Part shown: positions 1,417 to 64,000 of the stretch, piece after piece
How the letters are laid out: each line of letters opens with the position of its first letter
Position numbering within the stretch: position 1 is the stretch's first letter
Virus record (IMG/VR): IMGVR_UViG_3300021964_000012
Span: 124,001 to 188,000 of that record
Length of the DNA stretch: 64,000 nt
Direction: 5' to 3' (one strand)
Translations under genes and position numbers: made by a program
The notes under the pieces: model-generated
Databases searched by the model: none
What the model was told of the DNA's origin: nothing
Seen by the model: the letters and a program-made list of their open reading frames with translations, nothing else

Positions 1417-3711
1417 CTATTCTTGTGTTTCATTGACAGTTACAATACCATTTGTGTCTATGTAAGCATCACTGGGTGAGCCTTTAGGTTTAACATCAAG
1501 TGTTATTCTTGGACGTTTGCCTTTGAACCATACATCAGCAGTTACATGAACATTTTCCAGTTTTTCAAAAAGTATCTTTTTACTTAACGGCACTTTGATA
1601 ATTTCGTCAATCTTTCTGCCCAATGGTCTTGCACCCATTTTAGGATCATATCCAACGTCAACAAGATATTCTACCATTGCTTCTGTTACAATAATATTAA
1701 TATTTTTTTGTTTTAGGTTTGCTCTGAGTTCGTTGATAAACTTTGCAACAATTTTTTTGATTGCAAATGGTTCTAGTGTTTTGAACTTGACTATCAGATC
1801 TAATCTGTTGCGTAGTTCTGGCTTGAAAAAATCTTTTACTGCTTTGTCTTCACTGCCAGTACGTACAAGTTCTTGACCAAATCCAATATTGTTGTTTTCG
1901 TTGTCTCTAGCACCAAGATTTGATGTTAGTATAATAATACAGTTTTTTACATCAACAGTTTTGCCATTTGATCCTGTGATCTTACCTTCGTCCATCATTT
2001 GTAGAAATATGTTTGCTACATCTGGATGGGCTTTTTCAATTTCATCAAACAGCAGGACACTGTAGGGATTTTTACTAACATCTGAAATTAGTTTACCACC
2101 GCTGAGTGTGCTATCATCATAGCCGACAAAACCTGGAGGTGCGCCAAGCAAGCTGCTAACTGTGTGTTTGTCTTGATATTCGCTCATGTCATAACGCAAC
2201 AGATGCATTTCTAAATTGTTGCTCAACAGTTTAGCAAATTCAGTTTTACCTGTACCAGTAGGACCAAGAAATAAAAATGCTCCCATTGGACGATTTGGCG
2301 TGCTTATACCTGCATAGTTTACATAGAGCCTTTCTAGCACTTCGTCTACTACATGATCTTGTCCAAAAAGTTTTTCTTTGATGTTGTTATCTAGATTTTG
2401 TACTTTTTCACTAGCATCGCTCGCCACTTTTGTTTCTGGAATGTTTGCAATTCTTGAAACCTGTTTGTCAATTAAATCTTCTGTAATTACCAAACCTTCT
2501 TGATCTTTAACACGTTCAGTTGCACATGCTCCATCTACTAGGTCTATGCTCTTGTCTGGATTTTTTTTGTCGTGCATGTATCTAGTTGCTAATTCAACTG
2601 CTTTTTCAATGGCGCCTTTGTCTATTGCGACATTGTGAAACTTTTCTAATCTAGGACGCAATCCTTCTAATATCTTTACGGTGGTTTCTTTGTCAGGTTC
2701 ATCTATGCTGACTTTGTAAAAGCGCCTCATCAATGCACGATCTTTTTCAAAACTCTCGTAAAATTCTTCCCAGGTTGTACTTGCAATAACTTTGAGATTG
2801 CCTTTGGTAATTGCAGGTTTGATCATGTTGGAAAAATCCAAACTGCTTCCACCTGTTGAACCAGCACCTTTCATGGTATGTGCTTCGTCTATAAAAAGTA
2901 TACAGTTCTTTTTTGATTCTAAAGCTGAAATAATATCTTTGAGTTTTTCTTCAAATTCGCCACGGTACTTAGAGCCAGCAAGTAGACTGCCTATTTCCAA
3001 ACCCCACACCTCAAAGTTTTTAAGGAACTTTGGTATTTTATTGTCTTTTATTCTAGTTGCCAAGCCTTCTGCAATAGCAGTTTTTCCAACACCTGGATCT
3101 CCTACCATTAATACATTACTTTTAAAACGTTTAGCTAATACTGTAACTATTTCTTCGAGTTCTGTTTCTCGACCAATAACTGGTTCAAGTTTATCGTCTT
3201 TGGCAAGTTTGCTCACATTTATGCAGTGCTCTTCGAGTATTTCATTTGCGGTTGAGATGTCAATTCCGTCTTTGGATTTACCATTATATGTTTGTTGCCA
3301 GTGCATTACAAATTCTTGTTTGACAAGTCCATGTTTCAGCATATAGTAGGCCGCATGACTGTTGGTTTCAGCCATGATTGCTAACCACAGATCAATGGTT
3401 TCCATACTTCGTCTACCACCAAACATAACCTGTGTTAATGCTCTGTTGAAAACTCTTTCAAGTGCATTTGTCTTTTTTGGGTCTCCTTTAACTGGATTGC
3501 TGACCAGCATGGTTTGTGAATCAATATATAATTGTAAATCTGACACAATAGCATCAGAACTGGAACCAAAAGACTCAATGCATCTTTTGAATTTTGGATA
3601 CTGCACCATTGCTAATGTAAGGTGTTCGATTGTCACATAATCGTGTTTCTTGTCTTTCGCAAGTTTATGAGCAGTTGCAAGTATTTGTTCTATTTCAGGA
3701 CTGTGTTGCAT
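1417..3711 (-). CDS. clpA: ClpA-type AAA+ unfoldase
   Basis: Clp N-domain, two Walker A motifs (GDPGVGKT, GPTGTGKT), GSKYRGEFEE pore loop, ClpP-docking IGF loop (NNIGFG), no ClpB M-domain. Confidence 0.92.
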   Translation of the reverse strand: MQHSPEIEQILATAHKLAKDKKHDYVTIEHLTLAMVQYPKFKRCIESFGSSSDAIVSDLQLYIDSQTMLVSNPVKGDPKKTNALERVFNRALTQVMFGGRRSMETIDLWLAIMAETNSHAAYYMLKHGLVKQEFVMHWQQTYNGKSKDGIDISTANEILEEHCINVSKLAKDDKLEPVIGRETELEEIVTVLAKRFKSNVLMVGDPGVGKTAIAEGLATRIKDNKIPKFLKNFEVWGLEIGSLLAGSKYRGEFEEKLKDIISALESKKNCILFIDEAHTMKGAGSTGGSSLDFSNMIKPAITKGNLKVIASTTWEEFYESFEKDRALMRRFYKVSIDEPDKETTVKILEGLRPRLEKFHNVAIDKGAIEKAVELATRYMHDKKNPDKSIDLVDGACATERVKDQEGLVITEDLIDKQVSRIANIPETKVASDASEKVQNLDNNIKEKLFGQDHVVDEVLERLYVNYAGISTPNRPMGAFLFLGPTGTGKTEFAKLLSNNLEMHLLRYDMSEYQDKHTVSSLLGAPPGFVGYDDSTLSGGKLISDVSKNPYSVLLFDEIEKAHPDVANIFLQMMDEGKITGSNGKTVDVKNCIIILTSNLGARDNENNNIGFGQELVRTGSEDKAVKDFFKPELRNRLDLIVKFKTLEPFAIKKIVAKFINELRANLKQKNINIIVTEAMVEYLVDVGYDPKMGARPLGRKIDEIIKVPLSKKILFEKLENVHVTADVWFKGKRPRITLDVKPKGSPSDAYIDTNGIVTVNETQE

Positions 3712-3732
3712 AATTCTCCTTTGTGTTTATAT

Positions 3733-4527
3733 TTATTGACTGTGTTTCTTGATAGCACGAATTATTTCATCAGGAATCGATACAGGAATCTTTGTGTTTA
3801 TTTTTACAAATATATCTCCAGGATTGTGACCAATTCTCTTTACACCACAGGATGCAAGACGCATGACACTACCTGGATTGGTTCTAGGTGGGATATTTAA
3901 GTTAAAACTGCGTCCTATAATATCTGTAATTTTGATATTGCCTCCAACTACAAGTGTCCACAGGTTTACGTCTTGTTCACTATGCATATCGTTGCCATGA
4001 CGTTGCCAACGTGGATGTGGCTTCAAACGATAGTGTATAACCAAATCTAAACCACCTGGTCCAAGTTTTGGATAACGTATGTTTTCGCCATCAACAACTC
4101 CTGGAGGAACATCTACTTCGATGGTATTTTGTCCAGTCTGCATTTGTAGTGCAAGAGTTCTTTTTCCACCTTTCACTGCATCTTCTAAATCAATTGCCAT
4201 TGTTATTCTTGCATCTCTTGGACGCGGTGGTCGATTAGGATGCATACGTTGTCCAAAAATATTGAATATAGTATCAAAGTCAAAGGGTTGACCTTGTGTT
4301 TGAGAAAATCCAAATCCTTGTTTTTGTGGATCAGAGCTACCAGTTTGATCATAGTATGCACGTTTATTAGGGTCTTTGAGTATATCATACGCATTGCTTA
4401 TTTCTGCAAATTTGCTGGCATCTCCTCCTCGGTCAGGATGATGCTCTTTGGCTTTTTCTTTATAAGCTCGCTTGATTGTATCAGCAGTTGCACCTTTTGC
4501 AACGCCCAATATGGTATAAGGATTCAT
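3733..4527 (-). CDS. dnaJ: DnaJ-family co-chaperone (type II, CbpA-like)
   Basis: J-domain with HPD, G/F region, C-terminal domain (GDL/GDI motifs), no zinc finger. Confidence 0.9.
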   Translation of the reverse strand: MNPYTILGVAKGATADTIKRAYKEKAKEHHPDRGGDASKFAEISNAYDILKDPNKRAYYDQTGSSDPQKQGFGFSQTQGQPFDFDTIFNIFGQRMHPNRPPRPRDARITMAIDLEDAVKGGKRTLALQMQTGQNTIEVDVPPGVVDGENIRYPKLGPGGLDLVIHYRLKPHPRWQRHGNDMHSEQDVNLWTLVVGGNIKITDIIGRSFNLNIPPRTNPGSVMRLASCGVKRIGHNPGDIFVKINTKIPVSIPDEIIRAIKKHSQ

Positions 4528-5716: not shown

Positions 5717-6377
5717 AGTTTTTTCCTTCTATTACATGGGTATTTATGTACTTTGCGGCCTCTAGATGTGCTTTTTCAAGTGGATGTCCGCCTGGTCCAA
5801 TAGGAAATTTTTTATGTTTTGCCCATTCTAAAAATGTATATCCGTAAAAATTTACAATATAATGGTTCACTTGTTTCTGTAAAGGTGTAACAAATTTTTC
5901 TTTTGAATACAACATCGGGTCCATACAAGTCATTATAAAGTCAATATTGTTTTGTTCCAGTAGGCAAATTGTACTATGTATTTGTTGTAGATTACGATGT
6001 AGATTCCATTTATCACTGTCTATGTGTTTGTAAAAATAATGGTTAAGTTTATCTTCGTGGCGTGGATGAGTAACTGCCCACCAACTGGTTTCTATATCAA
6101 TATAATCAAAACGTTCAAACCAACTCCAATTTATAATAAACAATGCATCTCTATATTTCTCAAGATACTTACATACACACATGCTTATCCAATGATTGCC
6201 ACGTCCGCCTATTGTCATGGAGTCATATTCGATGCCAAGTGTTTTTGCAACCAAGGCAGGCCAGGTGCTTAGACTGTGAGTATGATGTGATGCTATAGTA
6301 CACGATGTTGAGCAATCAGCCAGTTCGTCACCACGAGTGAAGCTGTCACCAAAAGCCAGTACTTTTTCATAAGGCAT
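5697..6377 (-). CDS. SGNH/GDSL-like hydrolase-fold protein
   Basis: AFGDSFTRG block I and C-terminal GHPL...H. Confidence 0.55.
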   Translation of the reverse strand: MPYEKVLAFGDSFTRGDELADCSTSCTIASHHTHSLSTWPALVAKTLGIEYDSMTIGGRGNHWISMCVCKYLEKYRDALFIINWSWFERFDYIDIETSWWAVTHPRHEDKLNHYFYKHIDSDKWNLHRNLQQIHSTICLLEQNNIDFIMTCMDPMLYSKEKFVTPLQKQVNHYIVNFYGYTFLEWAKHKKFPIGPGGHPLEKAHLEAAKYINTHVIEGKNYGHRQT

Positions 6378-7652: not shown

Positions 7653-8375
7653 ATGTCTCGAGCTAAACGAAAAGCAAAATATCAAAGACAACTTCAACAA
7701 GACAACACAATAAACTTCAACCAAGCACTAAAACGCAAGCACATAGAACTTCTTCCGAAGTCGCGTAATCAAGAACAACTTATCTTAAACCTATTAGATC
7801 CACACACGAGTATCACTGTGGCAACCGGACCTGCAGGCACGGGTAAGACTTATCTTGCAATGTTAGCGGCTATAAAAGCATTTAAAGATGGTGCGTGTGA
7901 ACGTATTGTATTGACTCGTCCAGCAGTAGGTGTTGATGATGAAAAGCATGGATTTTTGCCCGGTGACTTGAACAGTAAAATGGAGCCGTGGACAAGACCT
8001 TTGTTTGATGTACTTCGTGAATTCTATACCACAAAAGAAATAGCACGTATGCTAGAAGAACAAACTATTGAAATATCGCCATTGGCTTTTATGAGAGGAC
8101 GTACATTCAAGGATGCCTGGATTATAGCTGATGAAATGCAAAATGCAACGCCTAGTCAAATGAAAATGCTAATGACAAGAATAGGCAAAAATTCAAAAAT
8201 AGTAATCACAGGAGACGTTGAACAAACGGATAGAACCGTACACAATAACGGTTTAATTGATTTATGCAAAAGACTAGAAACTGCTCGCAGTGGACTAGCC
8301 GTTTGTTACATGAGCAATCAGGATATACAAAGACATCCTATTATTGACACAGTATTGGAGATCTACGCAACTTAA
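7653..8375 (+). CDS. phoH: PhoH-family ATPase
   Basis: GPAGTGKT, GFLPGDL..K, PLAFMRGRTF, DEMQN, GDVEQTD, RHP motifs; AGGAG RBS. Confidence 0.95.
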   Translation: MSRAKRKAKYQRQLQQDNTINFNQALKRKHIELLPKSRNQEQLILNLLDPHTSITVATGPAGTGKTYLAMLAAIKAFKDGACERIVLTRPAVGVDDEKHGFLPGDLNSKMEPWTRPLFDVLREFYTTKEIARMLEEQTIEISPLAFMRGRTFKDAWIIADEMQNATPSQMKMLMTRIGKNSKIVITGDVEQTDRTVHNNGLIDLCKRLETARSGLAVCYMSNQDIQRHPIIDTVLEIYAT

Positions 8376-8379
8376 AAAT

Positions 8380-8482
8380 TGGCTCTGGGAGAAGGATTCG
8401 AACCTCCAAGGTTAAATATATTGCAGTACATTCAACCATACGGTTAACAGCCGTACGTGTTTACCAATTTCACCATCCCAGA
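8380..8482 (-). tRNA. tRNA-Asn(GUU), atypical class-II body with 11-bp variable arm (103 nt, CCA encoded)
   Basis: TCTGGGA TG GTG AAATTGGTAAA CAC G TACGG CT-GTT-AA CCGTA T GGTTGAATGTA CTGCAA TATATTTAACC TT GGAGG TTCGAAT CCTTC TCCCAGA G CCA; all stems pair; U1-A72, G73. Confidence 0.9.
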
Positions 8483-8488
8483 GTATTC

Positions 8489-9319
8489 TTATACTTTGTT
8501 GATCTTTTCTAGTGCAGGAATCATACGTGTCACACCTATGCCTCCGCCTACTCTTTGAAAGAAGTCAAACTCTAAAAACTTTTCTAGTTCTGCTTCGACT
8601 CTTTCCTTGCCAAACAACTTGAATAGTAGTTTACTATAAGCACCATCTGTAATACTATGGAATGTATCACGCATCATATCAACATCACATGAACGTTCTG
8701 CTGATCCAATAGTTTCCATACCACCTAGTATAACGTCCATCTTCTTTGCAGTATTTCCGTCATCGTTTCTGGCCATGTTCCAAAAAGGTGATGTTAGTTC
8801 AGGGAAGTTTGTAATAAGTGTTTGGCCAAACTCTTCTTCCATCTTAAGTTCGTGTTCTGCTTCCATTTCTGTATCAGCACCTAGTCCAAAATGTTGTTGC
8901 CATTCAGCATAGGTCTTTTCTGTAATATTACCAAATCCTAAGTATTCACATAGTTCATACTCCATGGATTTTAAATCATCTACACTGCCTGGCATTTCAA
9001 ATTCAAACATTGGAAATATTATATCATGTCTGCCTGGTATTGCATTAGGCTCTTGTCTATAGGAAGTGGAGACACAAAAAAACCCCTTACTGTCGGGGCT
9101 ACTTAATAATTCATGTTCCAACCACATCTGGCCGGTTTGCGGTAGTGGCCATACTTGGCCTGCGTAATTGTATGTTGCTACGTTGAATGGATCTTCACAT
9201 GCGGCTAGTATGCTCAATCTGTTTTGTGTGTGTACTTCAAGAAAACCTTTTTCCAAAAAAAATGACCTTAAAAGGCCAACTGTGGAAGTGAATTTGCTTG
9301 GGTCTATTAGTTGCGTCAT
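8489..9319 (-). CDS. class IIb aminoacyl-tRNA synthetase catalytic-domain-only protein (AsnRS-like / archaeal-type asparagine synthetase-like)
   Basis: Motif 1 (RSFFLEKGFLEVHT), motif 2 (SYRQE...RH...FPMFEFE), motif 3 (GGGIGVTRM), ETIGSAER; no N-terminal OB-fold anticodon-binding domain. Confidence 0.85.
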   Translation of the reverse strand: MTQLIDPSKFTSTVGLLRSFFLEKGFLEVHTQNRLSILAACEDPFNVATYNYAGQVWPLPQTGQMWLEHELLSSPDSKGFFCVSTSYRQEPNAIPGRHDIIFPMFEFEMPGSVDDLKSMEYELCEYLGFGNITEKTYAEWQQHFGLGADTEMEAEHELKMEEEFGQTLITNFPELTSPFWNMARNDDGNTAKKMDVILGGMETIGSAERSCDVDMMRDTFHSITDGAYSKLLFKLFGKERVEAELEKFLEFDFFQRVGGGIGVTRMIPALEKINKV

Positions 9320-9487: not shown

Positions 9488-9955
9488 CTAAAACTTACCT
9501 AAAAATCTTGCTATATGATGTACCCATGGCAACAACATTATAGCCATAAATGTGTTAGCACCAGTGTGTGCAAGTGCTATTCGAAGTGTATCGCCTTTGG
9601 GCATGCCATCGCTCACAAAAAAACCGGCTAACCAAATGGTGCCGGTAGTTCCAATGTTTGCGCCTAACACTGCCGCTATGGCTGCAGGCAGAGGCAGTGC
9701 CCCTGAGGCCACCAGTGCAATTATTGCCGTTGTACTTAAACTTGAACTTTGCCAAAGCAGTGTCATTACAATACCACCTAGAAACATATAGATTGGATTG
9801 CCTAAAAAGAAGTTTAAGTGTTCCAAGTTACCCATAGACTTCATACCACCTGAGAACATTTTCAGCCCTATATAAAATACTACCAGTCCAACAAGAGCCG
9901 TCATTATGGGATTGCCTAAGTCCATCCTACATACCTTTTTAATAAGTTTGTTCAT
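9488..9955 (-). CDS. Na+/phosphate cotransporter (NptA/SLC34-like), single repeat
   Basis: QSSS signature, GANIGTT motif, several TM helices. Confidence 0.8.
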   Translation of the reverse strand: MNKLIKKVCRMDLGNPIMTALVGLVVFYIGLKMFSGGMKSMGNLEHLNFFLGNPIYMFLGGIVMTLLWQSSSLSTTAIIALVASGALPLPAAIAAVLGANIGTTGTIWLAGFFVSDGMPKGDTLRIALAHTGANTFMAIMLLPWVHHIARFLGKF

Positions 9956-11270: not shown

Positions 11271-11451
11271 TGTTTGCCTCCTCTAAGATTTGTTTTCTTC
11301 CTTCGACACCGATCTGTGAATCCATCATGGTTTTTACATGTTGTAGCATTGCACACGCCATCATCAGTATATCTTCTCTGCTATCACACATCATAATCTG
11401 TTGTTCTATTGGCTTGCATAATTCTCGCATGCGAGCTTTTACATCAGTCAT
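11263..11451 (-). CDS. hypothetical protein
   Basis: 62-aa ORF with GAGGAG RBS. Confidence 0.55.
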   Translation of the reverse strand: MTDVKARMRELCKPIEQQIMMCDSREDILMMACAMLQHVKTMMDSQIGVEGRKQILEEANND

Positions 11452-11993
11452 TTTGTTATCTCCTCTTGTGTTATATGCAATTGACTTTTCATGTCATCTG
11501 TATTAAGGTACGCCAAGTTTATAATACTAGTAAAACCAATTACACGGGCTTCTGCTTGTTCGATCAAACGTTTGGTTGCCAACATACTGCCGCCAGTTGC
11601 AACCAAGTCATCTGCTATTAACACTCTATTAGCATGTCCTAACAGTCCTTCTTGTAGCACCAATGTATCTTCACCATACTCAAGTGCATAGGTTTCCTGC
11701 AACAAACTACCTGGATACTTGCTTCCTTTTTTACGCACCATAACAAAAGGCACTCCTATTGTAGCAGCCAACACTGCTCCTACTACAAATCCTCTGCTTT
11801 CAATACCCACTATGTGTGTGATATCACCGTTACGGTTGAATTGATCTTGAATTACAACTGCCATTTCGGCAGCAACTTGATTCCAAATTGGTTGTGCGAA
11901 CAAACTGTTTACATCATAAAAGTTTACACCTTCTACAGGATAATCCTGCACAGTTCGCATGTAATCTGTTGGTTTAGTTTTTACTGAAGACAT
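11448..11993 (-). CDS. apt: adenine phosphoribosyltransferase
   Basis: DYPVEGVNFYD, GIESRGF, VRKKG, YALEYG, PRPP loop LIADDLVATGGS; start moved to ATG at 11993 (GGAGG RBS). Confidence 0.9.
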   Translation of the reverse strand: MSSVKTKPTDYMRTVQDYPVEGVNFYDVNSLFAQPIWNQVAAEMAVVIQDQFNRNGDITHIVGIESRGFVVGAVLAATIGVPFVMVRKKGSKYPGSLLQETYALEYGEDTLVLQEGLLGHANRVLIADDLVATGGSMLATKRLIEQAEARVIGFTSIINLAYLNTDDMKSQLHITQEEITK

Positions 11994-13101
11994 AAACACC
12001 CTCCCATTTTTCTCTACCTTGTTTTCTATCATTGCCTACACCTGGACGTGTGTTAAGCATCATTTTAATTGTTTCTATGTGTTTGAATCCTAGTTTTTCT
12101 GCCGTCTCAATCCATCTTTGTGTAACTTCATAGGGTTCTTTTCTGTCGTAACTTTTATAGTCTGCAATGTTGGTAGCGAAAAGTCCTTCTCTATTGAGTC
12201 CTCTATGTATGTGTTCAATGGTTGGGACAACGTATCCGTCAAACCATTGATCTTCTGTTTTAAATTGTACCATACACTGGGTTTCTTCATCGCTATACTT
12301 TTCCAAGTTAAAATAAGGAGGACTACTAAATGCTAAATCTACATCCTCGGGTTGATATTCTTCGCTAACACTTTGTACTATGGTACTTCTTACGCCTGTT
12401 GCTTCATCAATGATATCATTTAGATAATTAAGATATTTTACAGTTTCAGTATTAGGTTCAACACCTATGTAATCATACTTAAAATTACTACTACCTATTC
12501 CTAAAAGTCTACCACCATAGCCGCAACTGTAATCATACACTCTGCCCCAAAGCACAGGACATAAATGTTCTGCTATTGCTTTAGCATTTTGTGCCTTAAA
12601 GTTAGTAACATTTTCGCCTGTAACTAGTTCAAGTGCAGTTCTTAATTGTGTGGGTCTTAGCAGTCGTTCACCAGTTCTAAATTCAAAACAGATACGTATA
12701 GCACGTTTAAGTTTACGTTCATCATAGAATCTATCTCGCAAACTATTTGAACCTCTACCTTTAGGTTCTGCAGTCATCATGTTAGGAAACAAAAATCGGT
12801 TAATGGTTTGTCCTCGATTGTTTCCAAGTCCAATCTTGCCTTGTTCTACATTGTTATACGATAGTTTGCTGAATTTACGAACTGCTTCTACCAGTCCCTT
12901 GTGTGTAAAATACACAATAGGAACAAGATCAATTGAACGATATATGTCATATACACTTTCGATAGTGCCTTCAGGATCTTGATCATATTGTGCTTTGTCA
13001 AACGCATCAAGTTGGTTATAAACACTTTCATAACCAGTGAACTCATCACTTTCAATTTGTGATGGATCAATATTCCATATTTGATATAAATCTTGAATCA
13101 T
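11974..13101 (-). CDS. amino (N6A/N4C) DNA methyltransferase
   Basis: SAM motif YDYSCGYGGRL and catalytic SPPYF. Confidence 0.8.
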   Translation of the reverse strand: MIQDLYQIWNIDPSQIESDEFTGYESVYNQLDAFDKAQYDQDPEGTIESVYDIYRSIDLVPIVYFTHKGLVEAVRKFSKLSYNNVEQGKIGLGNNRGQTINRFLFPNMMTAEPKGRGSNSLRDRFYDERKLKRAIRICFEFRTGERLLRPTQLRTALELVTGENVTNFKAQNAKAIAEHLCPVLWGRVYDYSCGYGGRLLGIGSSNFKYDYIGVEPNTETVKYLNYLNDIIDEATGVRSTIVQSVSEEYQPEDVDLAFSSPPYFNLEKYSDEETQCMVQFKTEDQWFDGYVVPTIEHIHRGLNREGLFATNIADYKSYDRKEPYEVTQRWIETAEKLGFKHIETIKMMLNTRPGVGNDRKQGREKWEGVYVFSKN

Positions 13102-15030: not shown

Positions 15031-15059
15031 ATTATATTATGATTAGCGAGGTAAGTCAA
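15031..15059 (-). promoter_or_regulatory. sigma70-type promoter for the clamp loader
   Basis: TTGACT-17-TATAAT, then AGGAG RBS. Confidence 0.7.
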
Positions 15060-16734
15060 CCAGTTCTGGAAAAACATCTAATAGTTTTACATTGTAGATT
15101 TTATCTCTTTGTTCAATCTCTTTCCAAAATAGTTTAGGATTAAACGTTTCGTTATTGTCCATGGCATGTATAATTGCCATATAACCAGTTGTACTTTTTC
15201 CATAAGGATCAAGTGGGCGTAACCATTCTACATGTTTTTGAAATTTTTCTCGGATTAGATCTTTGAGATACTCAGGAGCAGTTGTAACACGCAGATATTG
15301 CTTGTTGGTTAGTAGGTTCACAATCCATTGGTCAGCATCTATTAATCCTTGCTCTACCCAATTTCGATGAAAGTCTGGCATATGTAATGCGTTCAGAATT
15401 GTAATTGTTGATTGAACATTAAAGAATATATCTGGGCGTTTTTGTTTAATTTGTTTGGTAAAATCGACAATCTTGTCCCAGGTGTATGATCCAGGGCGTA
15501 AATATAACGCACGATCGTATTCAGCATCAAGACTTGCAAATACAATAATATTTTTAAAGTTTTGCCACAACTTAAAAATATCTCTTGAACCTAATCCAGA
15601 ATAAGTCATGTTTGTAATATACATTAGTTTTATATCGTGTCTTTTTTTCTCATCTAGTTTTTCAACAAAATCATATGTTTCTTTCATCATTAAAGGCTCA
15701 CCACCTTCGAATATGATCTGATTAAAATGATCTATATGTTTAAAATATTGTTCTAGTAAATCTGGATTACTTGCTACAAAGGCTTTATCAGGAACAGTCA
15801 TTCCTAGTAACTTTTCCACACTGTAAAGACTACTCGAAAACTTAGTCTGACACATTCTACATTGCAGATTACATAAATTGTTTGGTTTATAGTTCAGTAA
15901 CTTTATTTCAAATTTTTCAAGACTTCCATCATTATTTGTGCTTAAAACACTTGGAAATTCTTGTATGAAGTCTCTATTATAGGCCGTTCTTGCAGTATCA
16001 CCTTTATATTTTTGATCTTTTAAATAGCAAGTTTTACAAGCCTCTAGTTCTTTGCCTTCAAGCATATCAAGTCTAAGTTGGCGTGTATTTTTATTGTTCC
16101 ATATATCTTCAAGAGTTTCGTTGTTTGCATTTCCTAAAGCGGTGTCTGTAGATATGTAACAACAAGGGTTCACCTTATTATCTTGTGTGACATACTGACT
16201 TATCCACGGTAAAACACAAAATGTTTTACTTTCTAAAAATAGGTGCCTTGCTCTATCTGGCAAATTCTCTAAGAGAACACTGTTATTTCCTAGCCCACTA
16301 AAAGTTTGATAGATTGAAATATCTTTATATGTATTTGTATAATCACCTGAAGCTTTGTATAAATTGATTAGCACAGGGTCAACACTTGTGTTTTTATGAA
16401 CCCAAAGATATTCTTCTTCTAAATTAGGATTAGTTGAAATAATAATTGTAAAAAAATTACTAATATCAAGTTCGTTTAACATTGTCTGCACACTTTGTAG
16501 TACAGTGTTAGATTGTAATTCTTTATAAAAATCTTTTGTTATTGTCAATACAATGCGATGGTGTTCTTGATATGTAGTTTTGTAATTTTTTTTTAATTGA
16601 TTATAAAGCTCGAATAGATTATTTTCGTATAAGTCACAATCAATTACATCAAGAACTGTGTATGTTTCTTTTAGTTCATTTATCCATTGTTCTATTGTTG
16701 GGAGATTACTACCTTTGGTAAATGTCAATGGCAT
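15043..16734 (-). CDS. radical SAM protein with SPASM/twitch-like domain
   Basis: CNLQCRMC, GGEP, FCVLPW..PCC, CKTC. Confidence 0.85.
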   Translation of the reverse strand: MPLTFTKGSNLPTIEQWINELKETYTVLDVIDCDLYENNLFELYNQLKKNYKTTYQEHHRIVLTITKDFYKELQSNTVLQSVQTMLNELDISNFFTIIISTNPNLEEEYLWVHKNTSVDPVLINLYKASGDYTNTYKDISIYQTFSGLGNNSVLLENLPDRARHLFLESKTFCVLPWISQYVTQDNKVNPCCYISTDTALGNANNETLEDIWNNKNTRQLRLDMLEGKELEACKTCYLKDQKYKGDTARTAYNRDFIQEFPSVLSTNNDGSLEKFEIKLLNYKPNNLCNLQCRMCQTKFSSSLYSVEKLLGMTVPDKAFVASNPDLLEQYFKHIDHFNQIIFEGGEPLMMKETYDFVEKLDEKKRHDIKLMYITNMTYSGLGSRDIFKLWQNFKNIIVFASLDAEYDRALYLRPGSYTWDKIVDFTKQIKQKRPDIFFNVQSTITILNALHMPDFHRNWVEQGLIDADQWIVNLLTNKQYLRVTTAPEYLKDLIREKFQKHVEWLRPLDPYGKSTTGYMAIIHAMDNNETFNPKLFWKEIEQRDKIYNVKLLDVFPELVDLPR

Positions 16735-35761: not shown

Positions 35762-37315
35762 ATGCGAATATTAGTACTAGGAAATAACACAAAAGATACT
35801 GACGATCAAGTCAAAGAGCTTGCAGAGAAGGCTGGTACATATAATCACGGGCTCGTTGAAACAACAGATCAAGATTTCTCACAACACGGATATTACCACA
35901 CCACATTAATAGATTTATCACCTGGTGAAATAATGAAATTTGTACACCAGTTTGATGAAGTGATGGTGTTAGATCAACCAGCAAGGAGTTGGGATAGTCA
36001 AAAGCCAAGACTTAGCACCTATAAGTTGATCACTTCCCTAGAAAGACAGAGCAATAGACTAGGTCTTAAAGTTAGCGGTACTGATAATGACAGTTTTGTT
36101 GATATGAAGTATTGGACAGATTTGTTCAAATCAAATCGAAGTTTTTGTGCTTATCCATGGATAGTACATAGTCAAGACAAGGTTGATGCTAATAAATTAA
36201 ATCTTTGTGCTCGAAGTTCGCACGAAGTCACTTCATTAAAAGATCTTGGCAACTGGCAAACAAATCCTGCCTTTACAAAAATTAGAGAAAAAATGAAACG
36301 TGGCGAAAAACTTCCAGGCACATGTCGTGTATGTTACAAATACGAAGATCGTGGATTAACAGGATATAGAACACACGACAGCCTAGACTGGATTGCACGT
36401 TTAGGACTAAAAAATATTAAAGATTTTGACAAGATAGATAGTCCGTATTATTATGAGCTTAGACTTAGTAACCGATGCAACCTAATGTGTCGAATGTGTA
36501 CACCTCAACACAGTCATCTACTAAAGCAGGAGTTTGAAGAAAATCCTGGTTTGGTCAATAGTGGCCAGATGGACGATCCAACCCAAAGTTGGACAGATAC
36601 CGGTGTAGTTGACATAGAAAAATTAACATCTAAACATAAAGTTTACCTAACCGGCGGTGAGCCAATTATTATGCATGAAGTCTATGCATTCATGCGACAA
36701 TGCATAGACTTAAGAAAAACTGATTTTCTTTTTACCCTTGGAACAAATGCTCAACGATTAAATCCATTGTTCTTAAATCTTGCTAGTAAATTTAGCAATA
36801 TGCACTTCAGTGTAAGTATTGATGGTTATGGAAAAGTAAATGATTATATAAGATGGAAAAGTGATTTTGATACCATAATTAAAAATTGTCATATTCTAAT
36901 CAATCAAGGACACCAAATAACATGGAATCATGTTCCAACCATATGGGGAGTACATCGAACACACGAATTGTTTGAATACGTCAGCGAACATTTTCCTAAG
37001 GTTCCTCTCTATTTACAATACAATCGTGTTGAAATTACCAGTGCATTTAAAAGTCCGCTCATTGAGGAGACAATCGAAAGCATGGAACGATGTAAAAAAA
37101 CAATATTGTACACTAGTGACGGCAAAGACTGTACCAGTGGAATTGATGCTTTTTATGATCACTATAGTAGATATAAAGTTAACAAAGATGATTTAAAAAA
37201 GTTTTTTACATGGAATGATTTAATGGACAAAGCCAGAAATATATCAATGGCAGATTATATCCCAGAGCTAGACAGATGCAGAACAATGCTAGAGGTGAAC
37301 CAGAATGCAATTTGA
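35762..37315 (+). CDS. radical SAM protein with SPASM/twitch-like domain
   Basis: CNLMCRMC, GGEP, FCAYPW, CRVC, SIDG. Confidence 0.85.
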   Translation: MRILVLGNNTKDTDDQVKELAEKAGTYNHGLVETTDQDFSQHGYYHTTLIDLSPGEIMKFVHQFDEVMVLDQPARSWDSQKPRLSTYKLITSLERQSNRLGLKVSGTDNDSFVDMKYWTDLFKSNRSFCAYPWIVHSQDKVDANKLNLCARSSHEVTSLKDLGNWQTNPAFTKIREKMKRGEKLPGTCRVCYKYEDRGLTGYRTHDSLDWIARLGLKNIKDFDKIDSPYYYELRLSNRCNLMCRMCTPQHSHLLKQEFEENPGLVNSGQMDDPTQSWTDTGVVDIEKLTSKHKVYLTGGEPIIMHEVYAFMRQCIDLRKTDFLFTLGTNAQRLNPLFLNLASKFSNMHFSVSIDGYGKVNDYIRWKSDFDTIIKNCHILINQGHQITWNHVPTIWGVHRTHELFEYVSEHFPKVPLYLQYNRVEITSAFKSPLIEETIESMERCKKTILYTSDGKDCTSGIDAFYDHYSRYKVNKDDLKKFFTWNDLMDKARNISMADYIPELDRCRTMLEVNQNAI

Positions 37316-61180: not shown

Positions 61181-61692
61181 TCAATTACTCCAGTAATTTG
61201 TAGTGTATATCTAGATGTTTTTCCAACATTGGCTGCAAGATGCGGAGTGTCATTTTTCCATACTATGTAATCGCCAGCACGCCAGTCTGTGATTACTGTG
61301 TCTTCAATTTCACTTACATGGCCACTTTGCCAATCTTCTAAATAAATTATGGCTCTGTGAATATCACCTTGCCAGTTGTGTAGTTCGCGAAATCTTGCGT
61401 AGGTATCTCCATGCATTGGTAAACAACAACCTGGATTCATTCTATACACACTCCAACTAAAATAGCGCCAGTCAAATACATTACGTATTAGATGCATCCA
61501 TTCAGGTTCTTCTTGTCGCATGTCATACATGTCACCTGTGAATTTGGTCTGTGTGTAACCGAGGTTACGCCATTCCTTTAAACTTACAGGATCATTGAAT
61601 GGTTCGTTGATGTACATTAGGTCTTTGAATGCATCCATCCATACAGGATAGGTGTGACCACTATACCAGTTTTTTTGTTCTTGTATTTCCAT
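61177..61692 (-). CDS. 2OG-Fe(II) oxygenase/cupin-like protein
   Basis: LPMHGD...PHLAANVG..RYTLQITG. Confidence 0.75.
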   Translation of the reverse strand: MEIQEQKNWYSGHTYPVWMDAFKDLMYINEPFNDPVSLKEWRNLGYTQTKFTGDMYDMRQEEPEWMHLIRNVFDWRYFSWSVYRMNPGCCLPMHGDTYARFRELHNWQGDIHRAIIYLEDWQSGHVSEIEDTVITDWRAGDYIVWKNDTPHLAANVGKTSRYTLQITGVID

Positions 61693-62905
61693 AGTGTATT
61701 ACTTTGTACTTGTTGGTTTTTGTAGGCAGTGTACGCCATGGGTCTACAATTGTAGATCCATTGGGTATGTCGCAGTAGAAATTACTCATTACTGCAATAT
61801 GGCCAGTGTAACCATATGTAATGTTTCTGTTATGTGCATAGAGTATTATTGATGGTTCGTTAATTTTGTCAACACAATTCGTATTATCGTCGGCTAGTGG
61901 ATCAACATAGGTAATTTTTTGTCCTTGTTGTTCAATGTAGTATCCAACCAGTGTGCTATAACTTCCAATACAGAATGGTACGTCTGGCTTGTATGCTTTG
62001 CCGTGTATAACAATTGGTTTTCCATCTGCATGCTCTATTAAAAAATCTGCTAGGTTCTTTGCTTGTACTTCTCTGGCACCCATTATAGTATCAAACATGT
62101 CGTAACCAATGTTGTATTCCTGTGCTAGCCAACGCAGAGCAATATTATCTCTTGGATGGCATGCTCCTGCATCTCCCATGCCGGCAGTCATATACTTTGG
62201 CCCCATAATACGCATTGTACTTTGTGCTAGAGCATCAGTAACAACATCAACGTTGATATTACCTATCTTAAGTGCAAAGTCCTGTATCATATTTACAAGC
62301 CCTACTTTAGCACTAATAAATGTGTTGTAGAATATTTTAATTGCTTCACATTCGTCCCAAGTTCCTGTAACATATCTTGGATCATTTTTCATCAATGGTT
62401 TATATAGATTGATAAGATCTTCCATCTCACTTGGATTGCCTGTTTCTGTTCCTATCATTACCATTTCAGGATTTGCAAAATCCCATTTTACACTACCCAT
62501 TGCAATTAAATATGGATTGTACAAAAATTGATGCTTGTTATCCAACAGGGTATAGAAGTGTCTACGTGTTGTACCAGGTAAGACTGTTGATATCAATACT
62601 ATACGTTTTGGTTTGGTTGCATTTTCATTCACCATTTGAATTGCATCTTTAACTGCATCATGACCAAAGTCTCGTGGTTCCATATGTGAACTTGGCACAC
62701 TGCCATCATAGCCTTCTGCATGGGGCGTTTGTACTGCAATAAATATCCAGTCACTGTTGTCTATCATTTCTTTTGGTGTGTTGCAAACTTTTACACTGTC
62801 GCTGGTACGTGGGTAAATATCATAACCATGCACACTATATTTTTCAGCCATAACTTCAGCACAATCAAGACCAAGTTTTCCCAAGCCTATAAATCCAATT
62901 TTCAT
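61661..62905 (-). CDS. ugd: UDP-glucose/GDP-mannose 6-dehydrogenase
   Basis: GLGKLG Rossmann fold, AVQTP, STVLPGT, K..YN, G.GDAGACHPRD, AYKP. Confidence 0.88.
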   Translation of the reverse strand: MKIGFIGLGKLGLDCAEVMAEKYSVHGYDIYPRTSDSVKVCNTPKEMIDNSDWIFIAVQTPHAEGYDGSVPSSHMEPRDFGHDAVKDAIQMVNENATKPKRIVLISTVLPGTTRRHFYTLLDNKHQFLYNPYLIAMGSVKWDFANPEMVMIGTETGNPSEMEDLINLYKPLMKNDPRYVTGTWDECEAIKIFYNTFISAKVGLVNMIQDFALKIGNINVDVVTDALAQSTMRIMGPKYMTAGMGDAGACHPRDNIALRWLAQEYNIGYDMFDTIMGAREVQAKNLADFLIEHADGKPIVIHGKAYKPDVPFCIGSYSTLVGYYIEQQGQKITYVDPLADDNTNCVDKINEPSIILYAHNRNITYGYTGHIAVMSNFYCDIPNGSTIVDPWRTLPTKTNKYKVIHYGNTRTKKLV

Positions 62906-62926
62906 TTTTTAATGGAACCTTTCTAA

Positions 62927-64000
62927 ATGTCTATTCCTACTAATAATTTATACAATTTTGTAGCCCAGGCCTTAGAAAACAGGTATCTGATAAAATACTT
63001 TTATCCCTGGGGACAAAAAGGATTTGCAAATATTACCTGTAATGATGAGGACAAACATCCTAATTACTTCAGTGACCTCTTATTGGATAAGCCTACTGTG
63101 ATGTGTCACGACCAGGAACCATTGGATTTTGACTTATACAACGATAATGCCCTTAGTGAACAAATACACAACATGAATCCACATATTTTACGAGAATACG
63201 AAGGTCACAAAACTGATAAAAGCAGACGTAACTCTTGGCACGATTTAAATCTTAGATGGCATCTACCTAACGATAGCAGTAACTTTTGGGTTCTATTACA
63301 TAGTGAACTGAATTCTCCTGAAATTGCAAAGTATGAAAACACAGGTTTGTTTAAATGTGCGTATTGGTGGGCACATGCACCTATTGCAATTGATTGGTTT
63401 AGATTTGCTCGTTATGATAACAGACTAAAACGACAAAGTCAAGACATAAAGGCAAACTTTTTACTCTATGCTCGAGAAACTACAGGAAAACGTGCATATA
63501 GGAAAAATTTTTTAACACAATTAAAAAATACAGATAGTGTGCAACTAGGTAGTTTTAACAAATATCCTATATCTAGCAATAGCAGTGCAATATACGACCC
63601 AGACGACTTTGCATACACAAACTGTAGTATTGTATTAGAAACTGTAAATGATAGAATACATCTTACAGAGAAAACACTTCGTCCACTTGCATGTGGACAT
63701 CCTTTCTTGTTGGTAAACGGTCACGGCGCCTTAGAAAAAATAAGGTCGTATGGATTCAAGACATTCCATCCATTCCTTGATGAAAATTACGATCTAGAAC
63801 CAGATCGAGACAAACGTATGGCAATGGTAATAGCAGAAATCGACAGAATAGACACCTCAAGTGAAAAGTATCAACAGTGGATATGGAACGGTTGCCAAGA
63901 AATTGCGGACTATAACAAACGTTTATTCTTTGATGATAAATTTATATGGCGTGTTAAGACTGAACTTCAGCGTACTGTTAGAGAACACGGTATGCCAACT
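62927..64000 (+). CDS. hypothetical glycosyltransferase-like protein, runs off the right edge
   Basis: Not in ORF track. ATG at 62927; IVLET..LTEKTLRPLACGHPF...GFKTF..DENYD. Confidence 0.55.
   Translation, partial: MSIPTNNLYNFVAQALENRYLIKYFYPWGQKGFANITCNDEDKHPNYFSDLLLDKPTVMCHDQEPLDFDLYNDNALSEQIHNMNPHILREYEGHKTDKSRRNSWHDLNLRWHLPNDSSNFWVLLHSELNSPEIAKYENTGLFKCAYWWAHAPIAIDWFRFARYDNRLKRQSQDIKANFLLYARETTGKRAYRKNFLTQLKNTDSVQLGSFNKYPISSNSSAIYDPDDFAYTNCSIVLETVNDRIHLTEKTLRPLACGHPFLLVNGHGALEKIRSYGFKTFHPFLDENYDLEPDRDKRMAMVIAEIDRIDTSSEKYQQWIWNGCQEIADYNKRLFFDDKFIWRVKTELQRTVREHGMPT

What the first reader, a model, noticed from the sequence alone, without database searches (positions are those of the whole stretch)
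8489..9319. Synthetase paralogue reduced to its catalytic core
Seen: class II motifs 1-3 are intact, but motif 1 starts near residue 18, leaving no room for an anticodon-binding domain. Known: core-only class II paralogues have non-canonical jobs, for example archaeal AsnRS-like asparagine synthetase, AsnA and EpmA/PoxA (EF-P lysylation). Inference: adjacency to a matching atypical tRNA hints that this one still acts on tRNA.
Basis: partly seen in the sequence, partly recalled or inferred. Interest (0 to 1): 0.7.

Follow-up and report, generated by a model that had tools for sequence, protein, structure and literature searches.

The report
Synthetase-like enzyme with private tRNA
A marine giant phage carries a two-part cassette, a stripped-down asparagine-tRNA-synthetase look-alike followed six bases later by an odd leucine-shaped tRNA with an asparagine anticodon. 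In bacteria the same enzyme family sits with late pyrimidine genes in genomes that lack the first three pyrimidine steps, so it is probably a new route to dihydroorotate, not a true synthetase.

Summary
ORF 8489-9319 (-) is a 276-aa class IIb (Asp/Asn/Lys) catalytic core with no anticodon-binding domain. A 103-nt tRNA(GUU) follows it after 6 nt.

The pair is a conserved cassette: 76 of 79 related viral loci, plus P-SSM2, P-SSM5 and P-SSM7. The tRNA is odd. It has a tRNA-Leu-type body and a variable arm of 3 to 11 bp. U1-A72, G73 and G34U35U36 are invariant, but position 37 is a pyrimidine in 32 of 42 variants.

The enzyme is not a member of AsnRS, AsnA, archaeal AsnA or EpmA. It belongs to a separate, widespread family whose pocket motifs are AsnRS-like.

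The tRNA-linked phage genes form one derived clade inside a cellular family. Cellular members lack the tRNA and lie beside pyrD and pyrE-pyrF in several phyla. Their genomes mostly lack:
- ATCase (present in 3 of 42, against 95 of 121 and 14 of 14 in controls)
- dihydroorotase
- often carbamoyl-phosphate synthase (present in 5 of 21)

Best reading: an ATP-dependent enzyme that makes dihydroorotate, probably from asparagine, borrowed by phages as a nucleotide-supply gene. The role of the private tRNA remains unresolved. No biochemistry was done, and I found no literature on this.

The parts
8489..9319 (-). Core-only class IIb synthetase-like enzyme, 276 aa. Its pocket motifs are AsnRS-type: LPQTGQMWLE, F102-x-M-x-E106-x-E108, ETIGSAER209 and PFWNM. 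Its motif 3 is GGGIGVTR265.
   Evidence: (PHROG 29758, E 9e-130, function unknown).
8483..8488 (-). 6-nt spacer between the stop codon and the tRNA 5' end. The spacer is 4-10 nt in relatives, which implies co-transcription and processing (inferred).
8380..8482 (-). 103-nt tRNA(GUU) with encoded CCA. It has U1-A72, G73, a 3-bp tRNA-Leu-type D stem and D loop, an 11-bp variable arm with a 6-nt loop (about 8408-8435), and the anticodon loop CUGUUAA.
   Evidence: (109.5 bits with model R1).

Best explanation
The ORF belongs to a distinct, widespread family of catalytic-core-only, AsnRS-like adenylate-forming enzymes. I argue that the family's cellular job is to feed dihydroorotate dehydrogenase (PyrD). 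It would be a non-homologous replacement of the first pyrimidine steps: carbamoyl-phosphate synthase, aspartate transcarbamoylase and dihydroorotase.

The pocket is AsnRS-like, and many carrier genomes lack carbamoyl-phosphate synthase. The most likely reaction is therefore L-asparagine + bicarbonate/CO2 + ATP -> dihydroorotate + AMP + PPi. It would run through an N-carboxy-asparagine adenylate that ring-closes. This is inferred by analogy with TsaC/Sua5 threonylcarbamoyl-AMP chemistry (my own knowledge, not tested).

A clade of marine T4-like phages, including this 328-kb phage and cyanophages P-SSM2, P-SSM5 and P-SSM7, acquired the gene. They carry it as an auxiliary nucleotide-supply gene whose product would be finished to UMP by the host's PyrD, PyrE and PyrF.

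In that clade alone the gene is fused into a cassette with a private tRNA(GUU). The tRNA keeps the features that host AsnRS, or non-discriminating AspRS plus GatCAB, are known to read (GUU, G73, U1-A72). It has mostly lost the purine at position 37 that decoding tRNAs carry. I infer that host enzymes load it with Asn and that it serves the enzyme's need for asparagine, or buffers translation against the drain on asparagine.

Shown:
- the anatomy of the gene and the tRNA
- conservation of the cassette
- the family tree
- gene neighbourhoods
- presence and absence of pathway genes

Inferred:
- the reaction
- that the phage copy has the same activity
- everything about the tRNA's role
For: Family identity:
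- The family is one clade on a long branch, apart from AsnRS, AspRS, LysRS, EpmA and AsnA. The tRNA-linked genes form one nested clade with SH-aLRT 95.
- Cellular members follow taxonomy. One Absconditabacterales gene has in-frame TGA at a motif 3 glycine, so it is a genuine code-25 chromosomal gene.

Neighbourhood:
- PyrD and fused PyrE-PyrF lie within 3 kb in at least 12 of 71 cellular loci.
- They occur in at least 4 different gene orders, in Bacteroidota, Alphaproteobacteria, other Pseudomonadota, Myxococcota and Chlamydiota.

Presence and absence in genomes that carry the family:
- PyrB is over its cut-off in 3 of 42. That compares with 95 of 121 sampled Flavobacteriales, where the only family carrier lacks PyrB, and with 14 of 14 control genomes.
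- PyrC (multimeric type) is over its cut-off in 0 of 10 and 4 of 22. The dimeric type is in 0 of 5.
- CarB is found in 5 of 21, against 14 of 14 controls.
- PyrD is found in 26 of 37, and OMP decarboxylase in 6 of 10.
- One carrier without PyrB is a complete 3.2-Mb chromosome (G001).

Pocket: four signature blocks match AsnRS and not AspRS, AsnA, LysRS or EpmA.

Not the Asn-tRNA route: all 10 carrier genomes tested have canonical AsnS or at least recognisable gatB (fragmented in one), and 5 of the 10 have full AsnRS.

Phage context: the gene lies among nucleotide and phosphate genes (APRT, PhoH, a Na/Pi-transporter-like gene). All residues invariant in the family are kept in the phage copy.

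Cassette: relatives lose homology exactly at 8379 and 9320. The flanks differ between phages.
Against: - No biochemistry was done. The reaction is a proposal only.
- Class II synthetase-type enzymes are known to adenylate carboxylates of bound acids. An N-carboxy-amino-acid adenylate has no precedent in this fold that I know of.
- Chlamydiota, CPR, DPANN and Dependentiae carriers mostly lack a clear PyrD.
- Three carrier MAGs do have PyrB and PyrC. This may be redundancy or bin contamination.
- Most of the genomes are MAGs, so absences are soft.
- The phage itself has no PyrD or OMP decarboxylase. The hosts of P-SSM2 and P-SSM7 presumably have the normal pathway, so the benefit is assumed.
- The metabolic reading does not by itself explain why a tRNA(GUU) is welded to the gene.
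- A second, independent case of an ordinary tRNA-Asn 205 nt downstream of a divergent cellular member (L156) hints at a real tRNA(Asn) tie.
Confidence: 0.45

Rival explanations
1. Minimal orthogonal asparaginyl-tRNA synthetase. The core-only enzyme activates Asn and charges the adjacent tRNA(GUU). It would recognise the tRNA by its acceptor end or long variable arm instead of the anticodon, much as catalytic-domain-only PylRS works with tRNA(Pyl). This would give the phage its own Asn-decoding capacity.
For: - All class II motifs are present and the pocket is AsnRS-type.
- The gene-tRNA cassette is conserved and mobile.
- The tRNA has the AsnRS identity set: GUU plus G73.
- The motif 2 loop is strongly conserved.
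- In L156 an ordinary tRNA-Asn lies downstream of a distant member.
Against: - The tRNA link is confined to one derived clade. About 65 cellular loci and two huge phages lack it.
- Cellular members coexist with full AsnRS in 5 of 10 genomes. No long-armed tRNA(GUU) was among the best model hits there, which were all tRNA-Leu.
- Position 37 is a pyrimidine in 32 of 42 tRNA variants, which is poor for decoding.
- The invariant anticodon cannot be read by an enzyme with no anticodon-binding domain.
- The variable arm ranges from 3 to 11 bp, so it is not a fixed handle.
- The phage-clade proteins are very acidic, with pI 4.5-4.95. This is weak evidence.
- This reading leaves the pyrimidine-operon context and the loss of PyrB, PyrC and CarB unexplained.
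Confidence: 0.2
2. tRNA-independent asparagine synthetase (AsnA-like or archaeal AS-AR-like): Asp + NH3 + ATP -> Asn. The neighbouring tRNA-Asn would simply raise Asn-decoding capacity, forming an 'asparagine supply module'.
For: - There is precedent: core-only Asx-type paralogues act as Asn synthetases (Roy et al. 2003; Blaise et al. 2011; reviewed in PMC9437257).
- NF005055 and PDB 3p8t match weakly.
- The phage is fairly Asn-rich: 6.0% of codons are AAT or AAC.
Against: - Scores are far below the family cut-offs. NF005055 scores 18 bits against 389, and no AsnA family match appears.
- AS-AR and AsnA are not among the 50 best fold matches.
- Half of the carrier genomes lack AsnRS, so free Asn would be of no use for translation there. 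Several already have AsnB.
- It does not explain the operons with pyrD and pyrEF, or the missing PyrB, PyrC and CarB.
Confidence: 0.12
3. The enzyme works on the aminoacylated tRNA. Host non-discriminating AspRS plus GatCAB, or host AsnRS, load the private non-decoding tRNA. The synthetase-like enzyme then takes Asn from it, or transforms tRNA-bound Asn or Asp. The tRNA would thus act as a biosynthetic scaffold in hosts that make Asn only on tRNA.
For: - U1-A72 (a GatCAB determinant, from my own knowledge), G73 and GUU are invariant even though the body is Leu-type.
- Purine 37 is lost.
- The enzyme lacks an anticodon reader.
- The cassette is inherited as a unit.
Against: - This is purely inferential.
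- Cellular members need no dedicated tRNA.
- The host of this phage is unknown (no psbA).
- Host AsnRS and Asn-synthetase status could not be tested.
- The complex prediction tool did not fold the RNA-protein job.
Confidence: 0.12

Closest known systems
Asparaginyl-tRNA synthetase (AsnRS), catalytic domain
   Same: - It has the same class IIb fold. The best Foldseek match is P. horikoshii AsnRS 1x54, and the best profile hits in PDB are AsnRS at about 1e-15.
- The pocket blocks are the same: Q-x-G-Q-x-x-x-E, F-x-M-x-E-x-E, E-x-x-G-x-x-x-R and an (A/P)F(Y/W) block.
- The motif 2 R...RH and the motif 3 Arg are shared.
   Different: - It has no anticodon-binding OB domain or hinge.
- The motif 1 Pro is replaced by an invariant Gln.
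- It lacks the 2-3-residue AsnRS insert before the E-x-x-G block.
- It has an extra conserved helix motif (DG-x-Y-x-x-x-L-F-x-x-F-G-K-x-R-V-x-x-E-L) before motif 3.
- It scores 36 bits against the 343-bit cut-off of TIGR00457.
- It sits on a separate long branch.
- It coexists with true AsnRS.
Archaeal asparagine synthetase AS-AR (AsnRS2; PDB 3p8t, 1nnh) and bacterial AsnA
   Same: These are core-only, roughly 290-330-aa class II paralogues of the Asx group with a metabolic job that does not involve tRNA. The general logic of 'a synthetase core turned into a biosynthetic enzyme' is what I propose here.
   Different: - Sequence similarity is only marginal: 3p8t at E 2e-6 with the family profile, NF005055 at 18 bits, and no PF03590 match.
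- E. coli AsnA differs at all pocket blocks.
- The genomic context is pyrimidine genes, not asparagine genes.
- The phage clade has a dedicated tRNA.
PylRS catalytic-domain-only enzymes with tRNA(Pyl) (pylS-pylT)
   Same: A roughly 270-aa class II core is encoded next to a structurally unusual, dedicated tRNA, and the enzyme cannot read the anticodon.
   Different: - It belongs to a different subclass (IIc).
- PylRS is a proven synthetase with a stop-codon suppressor tRNA.
- Here charging is unproven, the anticodon is a sense anticodon that is strictly conserved, and most family members have no tRNA partner.
TsaC/Sua5 (threonylcarbamoyl-AMP synthase)
   Same: The proposed chemistry is the same: amino-acid amine + CO2/bicarbonate + ATP gives an N-carboxy adenylate, which cyclises readily. 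This rests on my own knowledge and is an analogy only.
   Different: - The fold is unrelated (YrdC).
- The product is used for tRNA t6A37, not pyrimidines.
- There is no sequence relationship.

Membership tests
Class II aminoacyl-tRNA synthetase superfamily, subclass IIb core (Pfam PF00152) | Match to tRNA-synt_2 above the gathering score, and an antiparallel-sheet catalytic fold | tested here: met
   59.2 bits against a cut-off of 25. The AF2 model has pLDDT 96.9, and Foldseek gives probability 1.00 to AsnRS, AspRS and LysRS cores.
Class II aminoacyl-tRNA synthetase superfamily, subclass IIb core (Pfam PF00152) | Motifs 1, 2 and 3 with their invariant Pro, Arg and Arg | tested here: inconclusive
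   The motif 2 Arg (R88) and motif 3 Arg (R265) are present. The motif 1 helix and strand are present, but the Pro is an invariant Gln (Q32).
Asparaginyl-tRNA synthetase (TIGR00457 / NF003037) | Full-length equivalog score; N-terminal anticodon-binding OB fold | tested here: not met
   36.5 and 35.8 bits against cut-offs of 342.6 and 414. Only model positions about 292-396 align. There is no N-terminal domain.
Asparaginyl-tRNA synthetase (TIGR00457 / NF003037) | Aminoacylation of tRNA(Asn) | not testable with these tools
   The RNA-protein complex job was not folded. An enzyme assay is needed.
Archaeal-type asparagine synthetase A (NF005055) | Equivalog score | tested here: not met
   18.4 bits against a cut-off of 389. 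PDB 3p8t matches at E 1.8e-6 over about 100 residues only.
Bacterial AsnA (aspartate-ammonia ligase) | Family match and AsnA pocket residues | tested here: not met
   No AsnA family appears in the Pfam or NCBIfam lists at E up to 1. E. coli AsnA differs at every signature block and sits on a very long separate branch.
EpmA/GenX (EF-P lysine ligase, TIGR00462) | Equivalog score; LysRS-type pocket | tested here: not met
   14.1 bits against a cut-off of 286.9. The pocket has the Asx-type Arg (R209), not the LysRS/EpmA pattern.
Transfer RNA (Rfam RF00005) | Score over the gathering threshold; cloverleaf supported by covariation | tested here: met
   56 bits against a threshold of 29. 17 of 24 pairs have compensatory changes in 42 variants. 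The MFE fold is a cloverleaf with an 11-bp extra arm.
Canonical bacterial tRNA-Asn | Short variable loop, purine (t6A) at position 37, Asn-type D arm | tested here: not met
   The variable arm runs from 11 to about 29 nt. Position 37 is U or C in 32 of 42 variants. The D arm matches tRNA-Leu of several bacteria apart from one base at D-loop position 13 (A or G in the cassette tRNAs). GUU, G73 and U1-A72 are kept.
De novo pyrimidine pathway (proposed new member upstream of PyrD) | Gene clustering with pyr genes, and complementary distribution with the enzymes it would replace | tested here: met
   Catalytic activity itself was not tested.

The most novel reading that the evidence does not exclude
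A synthetase-derived enzyme makes dihydroorotate directly from asparagine, CO2 and ATP. It would replace carbamoyl-phosphate synthase, aspartate transcarbamoylase and dihydroorotase in many bacteria, archaea and phages. In marine T4-like phages it is coupled to a non-decoding, Leu-shaped tRNA(GUU). That tRNA would act as a scaffold on which the host's AspRS and GatCAB build the asparagine that the enzyme consumes.
Probability: 0.12. Interest if true: 0.95.

Novelty: new variant of a known kind. Interest (0 to 1): 0.8.

Why it matters
The de novo pyrimidine pathway is regarded as near-universal. Suppose this family really replaces its first three enzymes in Weeksellaceae, Chitinophagales, Saprospiraceae, some Proteobacteria and Myxococcota, and perhaps in Chlamydiota, CPR and DPANN. 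That would be a new central-metabolism route, and a new chemistry for the class II synthetase fold. Automatic annotation would currently be scoring these organisms as pyrimidine auxotrophs.

For phage biology, it would add an abundant auxiliary metabolic gene. More than 8000 near relatives were found in ocean and estuary data. In cyanophage genomes it has stood as 'tRNA ligase' since 2005-2010.

The welded tRNA is of interest in its own right. It has a tRNA-Leu body re-fitted with the tRNA-Asn identity set, a variable arm of very different lengths, and usually no purine at position 37. It is either a naturally orthogonal synthetase-tRNA pair or a tRNA used outside decoding. Either result would interest people who work on tRNA identity and on genetic-code engineering.

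Tried and rejected
- **RNA-protein complex:** Complex prediction on the dimer plus the tRNA was counted but not folded. It gives no evidence either way.
- **ARAGORN:** it finds no tRNA in the window, a false negative for the 103-nt tRNA. It also misses most long-armed copies.
- **Megablast:** a search of the region against phage records found nothing.
- **Distant viral members:** The search for related loci with the 74-sequence alignment failed for lack of conserved stretches. With a 10-sequence alignment it only returned the same close relatives. A scan with the huge-phage homologue gave 2 loci. Distant viral members therefore remain poorly sampled.
- **A true archaeal AS-AR sequence:** I looked among 151 DPANN genomes and found none over the cut-off. 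AS-AR pocket residues could not be compared directly.
- **Cyanophage origin:** this was rejected as a given. G000 has no psbA, so the host is unknown.
- **Sole AsnRS of reduced genomes:** rejected. Each of the 10 carrier genomes has AsnS or at least recognisable gatB; in G009 gatB is in fragments.
- **Antisense ORF cluster:** an ORF cluster seen in 18 loci lies antisense within the family gene itself (e.g. L096:3031-3378 against the gene at 2959-3846), so I read it as an artefact.
- **Metatranscriptome contigs:** they cover the cassette, but they cannot prove transcription or tRNA processing.
- **Literature:** searches found only the label 'tRNA ligase' (T4-GC 194) in PMC3037559. Nothing was found on function, on the tRNA, or on a synthetase-like pyrimidine enzyme.
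Full report
**1. What is in the window**

The window is part of a 328,292-bp virus record with direct terminal repeats. The phage is T4-like by its tail and baseplate hits, and it carries a large ATP-dependent protease, radical-SAM proteins and a UDP-glucose dehydrogenase. It has no psbA. Its DNA is found mainly in estuary and marine metagenomes. The host is unknown.

ORF 8489-9319 on the minus strand encodes 276 aa. Its database matches are:
- Pfam tRNA-synt_2 (class II D/K/N) over nearly the whole catalytic-domain profile
- PHROG 29758, function unknown, at E 9e-130
- only faint, partial matches to curated equivalogs: asnS 36 bits, AspRS 31, archaeal AsnA 18, EpmA 14, all hundreds of bits below their cut-offs

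An AlphaFold2 model built on 74 diverse relatives is very confident (pLDDT 96.9). It superposes on the catalytic domains of P. horikoshii AsnRS, on several AspRS and on LysRS, with TM 0.72-0.79 on the query. Alignment shows that residue 13 onward corresponds to the motif 1 helix of AsnRS and AspRS. The anticodon-binding OB fold and the hinge are simply absent. The one nuance is that the motif 1 proline is an invariant glutamine.

**2. The tRNA**

ARAGORN reports no tRNA in the window. Rfam's tRNA model scores 56 bits at 8383-8482 (-). With its encoded CCA the gene is 103 nt (8380-8482) and begins 6 nt after the stop codon.

It folds into a cloverleaf with an 11-bp extra arm and a 6-nt loop.

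Among 79 related IMG/VR loci with enough downstream sequence, 76 have the same tRNA 4-10 nt after the stop. So do cyanophages P-SSM7, P-SSM2 and P-SSM5.

The 42 distinct sequences give 17 of 24 base pairs with compensatory changes. Across these 42 sequences:
- U1-A72, G73 and G34-U35-U36 are invariant.
- CCA is encoded in all but the cyanophage copies.
- The variable arm ranges from 3 bp with a GNRA loop to about 11 bp.
- Position 37 is U in 30, C in 2 and A in only 10.

A covariance model of this tRNA finds tRNA-Leu as its best match in eight of ten bacterial and archaeal genomes, and as the best match identified in a ninth. In the tenth the top hit (L197) was not called a tRNA by ARAGORN. 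The D arm matches bacterial tRNA-Leu apart from one base at D-loop position 13, which is A or G in the cassette tRNAs.

So this is a Leu-shaped tRNA that has been given the tRNA-Asn identity set. It usually lacks the purine at position 37 that decoding tRNAs have. That last statement about purine 37 rests on established tRNA knowledge.

**3. The cassette**

The flanks differ between phages. The gene sits near PhoH here, near gp23 and gp3 in P-SSM7, and near a lipase in P-SSM2.

Metatranscriptome contigs of related strains lose homology exactly at 8379 and 9320. The gene and the tRNA therefore travel as one unit.

Those RNA-library contigs cover both parts. They cannot prove transcription.

**4. 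The family is much wider than the phages**

More than 8000 near relatives exist in the 5.8-billion-protein collection, and there are 688 clusters at the 50% level.

A scan of one genome per species found 76 loci. They lie in Weeksellaceae/Moheibacter, Chitinophagales, Saprospiraceae, Alphaproteobacteria and other Pseudomonadota, Myxococcota, Chlamydiota, Dependentiae, CPR and DPANN. Several are on megabase contigs.

One Absconditabacterales copy has in-frame TGA at a motif 3 glycine, as expected for code 25. These are therefore real chromosomal genes.

In a maximum-likelihood tree:
- The family is a single group on a long branch, apart from AsnRS, AspRS, LysRS, EpmA and AsnA.
- Its cellular sub-clades follow taxonomy.
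- All tRNA-linked genes form one nested clade (SH-aLRT 95). The closest relatives of that clade lack the tRNA.

The tRNA model finds nothing next to the gene in about 65 cellular loci or in two huge phages. The exception is an ordinary tRNA-Asn 205 nt downstream in one divergent MAG locus, L156.

**5. What the cellular members say**

Ten carrier genomes were tested. All have canonical AsnS or recognisable gatB, and five of them have full AsnRS; in one AsnS-less genome, G009, gatB is present only in fragments. The protein is therefore not the housekeeping AsnRS.

An all-against-all comparison of flanking ORFs found two neighbours shared across phyla. Pfam names them dihydroorotate dehydrogenase and a fused orotate phosphoribosyltransferase-OMP decarboxylase. 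They occur within 3 kb in at least 12 of 71 loci, in at least four different gene orders.

The genomes that carry the family have this pathway content:

| Enzyme | Carrier genomes | Comparison |
|---|---|---|
| Aspartate transcarbamoylase | 3 of 42 over cut-off | 95 of 121 sampled Flavobacteriales, where the single carrier is one of those without it; 14 of 14 controls |
| Dihydroorotase | 0 of 10 and 4 of 22; 0 of 5 for the dimeric type | 11 of 14 controls over cut-off for the multimeric type; 1 of 14 (E. coli) for the dimeric type |
| Carbamoyl-phosphate synthase large subunit | 5 of 21 | 14 of 14 controls |
| PyrD | 26 of 37 | 14 of 14 controls |
| OMP decarboxylase | 6 of 10 | 14 of 14 controls |

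One ATCase-less carrier is a complete 3.2-Mb chromosome.

This is the classical signature of non-orthologous displacement. The late pathway is kept, the early pathway is gone, and a new gene sits in the late-pathway operon.

**6. What the active site says**

Four blocks that distinguish AsnRS from AspRS are of the AsnRS type:
- LPQTGQMWLE matches Q-(T/S)-G-Q-x-x-x-E, as against QSPQLFKQ.
- F-P-M-F-E-F-E matches F-W-M-L-E-P-E, as against F-T-Q-I-D-V-E.
- E-T-I-G-S-A-E-R matches E-I-I-G-G-S-Q-R.
- PFWNM matches AFYM.

E. coli AsnA, EpmA and LysRS differ at all of these. The ATP-binding residues are intact: motif 2 Arg and Arg-His, the stacking Phe, and the motif 3 Arg.

The family also has a conserved helix motif of its own before motif 3.

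The enzyme therefore most likely binds asparagine (or aspartate in reverse orientation) and ATP, and forms an adenylate.

**7. Mechanism proposed (inference)**

Many carriers lack carbamoyl-phosphate synthase, so carbamoyl phosphate cannot be the general donor.

Dihydroorotate is formally asparagine with a carbonyl bridging its alpha-amino and side-chain amide nitrogens. I therefore propose Asn + CO2/bicarbonate + ATP -> dihydroorotate + AMP + PPi. It would go through an N-carboxy-Asn adenylate that ring-closes. The analogy is threonylcarbamoyl-AMP made by TsaC/Sua5, which cyclises readily (my own knowledge). ATP-driven closure of another Asp-derived intermediate is not excluded.

In the phage the gene would be an auxiliary metabolic gene. 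It would feed host PyrD, PyrE and PyrF while bypassing the feedback-regulated early steps. It lies among APRT, PhoH and a phosphate-transporter-like gene. The phage itself has no PyrD or OMP decarboxylase.

**8. The tRNA remains the open part**

An enzyme without an anticodon-binding domain cannot be what keeps GUU invariant.

Three features fit loading by host AsnRS, or by non-discriminating AspRS plus GatCAB:
- U1-A72 is kept on a Leu-type body.
- G73 is kept.
- Purine 37 is lost.

These determinants are taken from established knowledge. They also suggest that decoding matters less for this tRNA.

I rank the readings of the tRNA in this order:
- (a) It supports the enzyme's asparagine economy.
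- (b) It forms a true minimal AsnRS-tRNA pair with the enzyme.
- (c) It is a tRNA-bound substrate scaffold.

None of these could be tested here.

**9. Known or new**

In the literature held here, the gene appears only as 'tRNA ligase' (T4-GC 194) in a gene table for P-SSM2 and P-SSM7 (PMC3037559). Reviews of synthetase paralogues and of jumbo phages do not mention it. I found no paper on a synthetase-like pyrimidine enzyme or on the long-armed tRNA(GUU).

**10. Verdict**

The most informative evidence, however, points away from both tRNA charging and asparagine supply, and towards a new entry into pyrimidine synthesis.

My confidence in that main reading for the phage gene is moderate (0.45), because everything beyond genomics is inferred.

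Noticed in passing
L166 (NC_006883.2, P-SSM2) 3814-3902; annotated tRNA at locus 5825-5910: The RefSeq tRNA-Asn feature of P-SSM2 (PSSM2_199) is annotated about 2 kb away, inside a CDS. The covariance model places the tRNA directly after the 'tRNA ligase' gene, where the locus-tag order also puts it. The annotated coordinates look shifted.
   Followed up: partly
L130 and L139 (Absconditabacterales MAGs), e.g. L130:2992-3810: The family gene has in-frame TGA codons. One falls at a conserved glycine of motif 3 (GG*GIG read as G). This fits genetic code 25 in these bacteria.
   Followed up: partly
G009:C3:82188-83607: In one carrier genome without AsnS, gatB appears in four or five fragments with stops. 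This may be a pseudogene or long-read indel errors. If it is real, the route to Asn-tRNA in that organism is unclear.
   Followed up: no
window 9488-9955 (-), 11448-12032 (-), 7653-8375 (+): Three genes lie next to the cassette: a 155-aa fragment-like Na/Pi-cotransporter-related protein, an adenine phosphoribosyltransferase, and PhoH. Together they form a nucleotide and phosphate auxiliary-gene neighbourhood.
   Followed up: partly
window 1417-3711 (-), 15043-16734 (-), 35762-37315 (+), 61661-62905 (-): The window also holds a 764-aa ATP-dependent protease (PHROG 4871), two large radical-SAM-domain proteins and a UDP-glucose dehydrogenase. Several ORFs of 350-1180 aa have no PHROG match at all.
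   Followed up: no
G000:C1 about 61,900-63,340: By ARAGORN the whole 328-kb phage genome has only three other tRNAs: Thr-UGU, Trp-CCA and Arg-ACG. They are clustered far from the cassette.
   Followed up: no
L156:4021-4095 (MAG C24_maxbin.066): An ordinary 75-nt tRNA-Asn lies 205 nt downstream of the most divergent family member sampled (43% identity). The context looks cellular (phosphorylase, subtilase). This may be a second, independent association with tRNA(Asn).
   Followed up: partly
window 8408-8435 (variable arm) and alignment A2 columns 46-74: Long-armed variants share a GCAA-containing loop and a conserved UAUUUA on the 3' strand of the extra arm. Short-armed variants (85-88 nt) lack both. 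The meaning of this conserved sequence is unknown.
   Followed up: no
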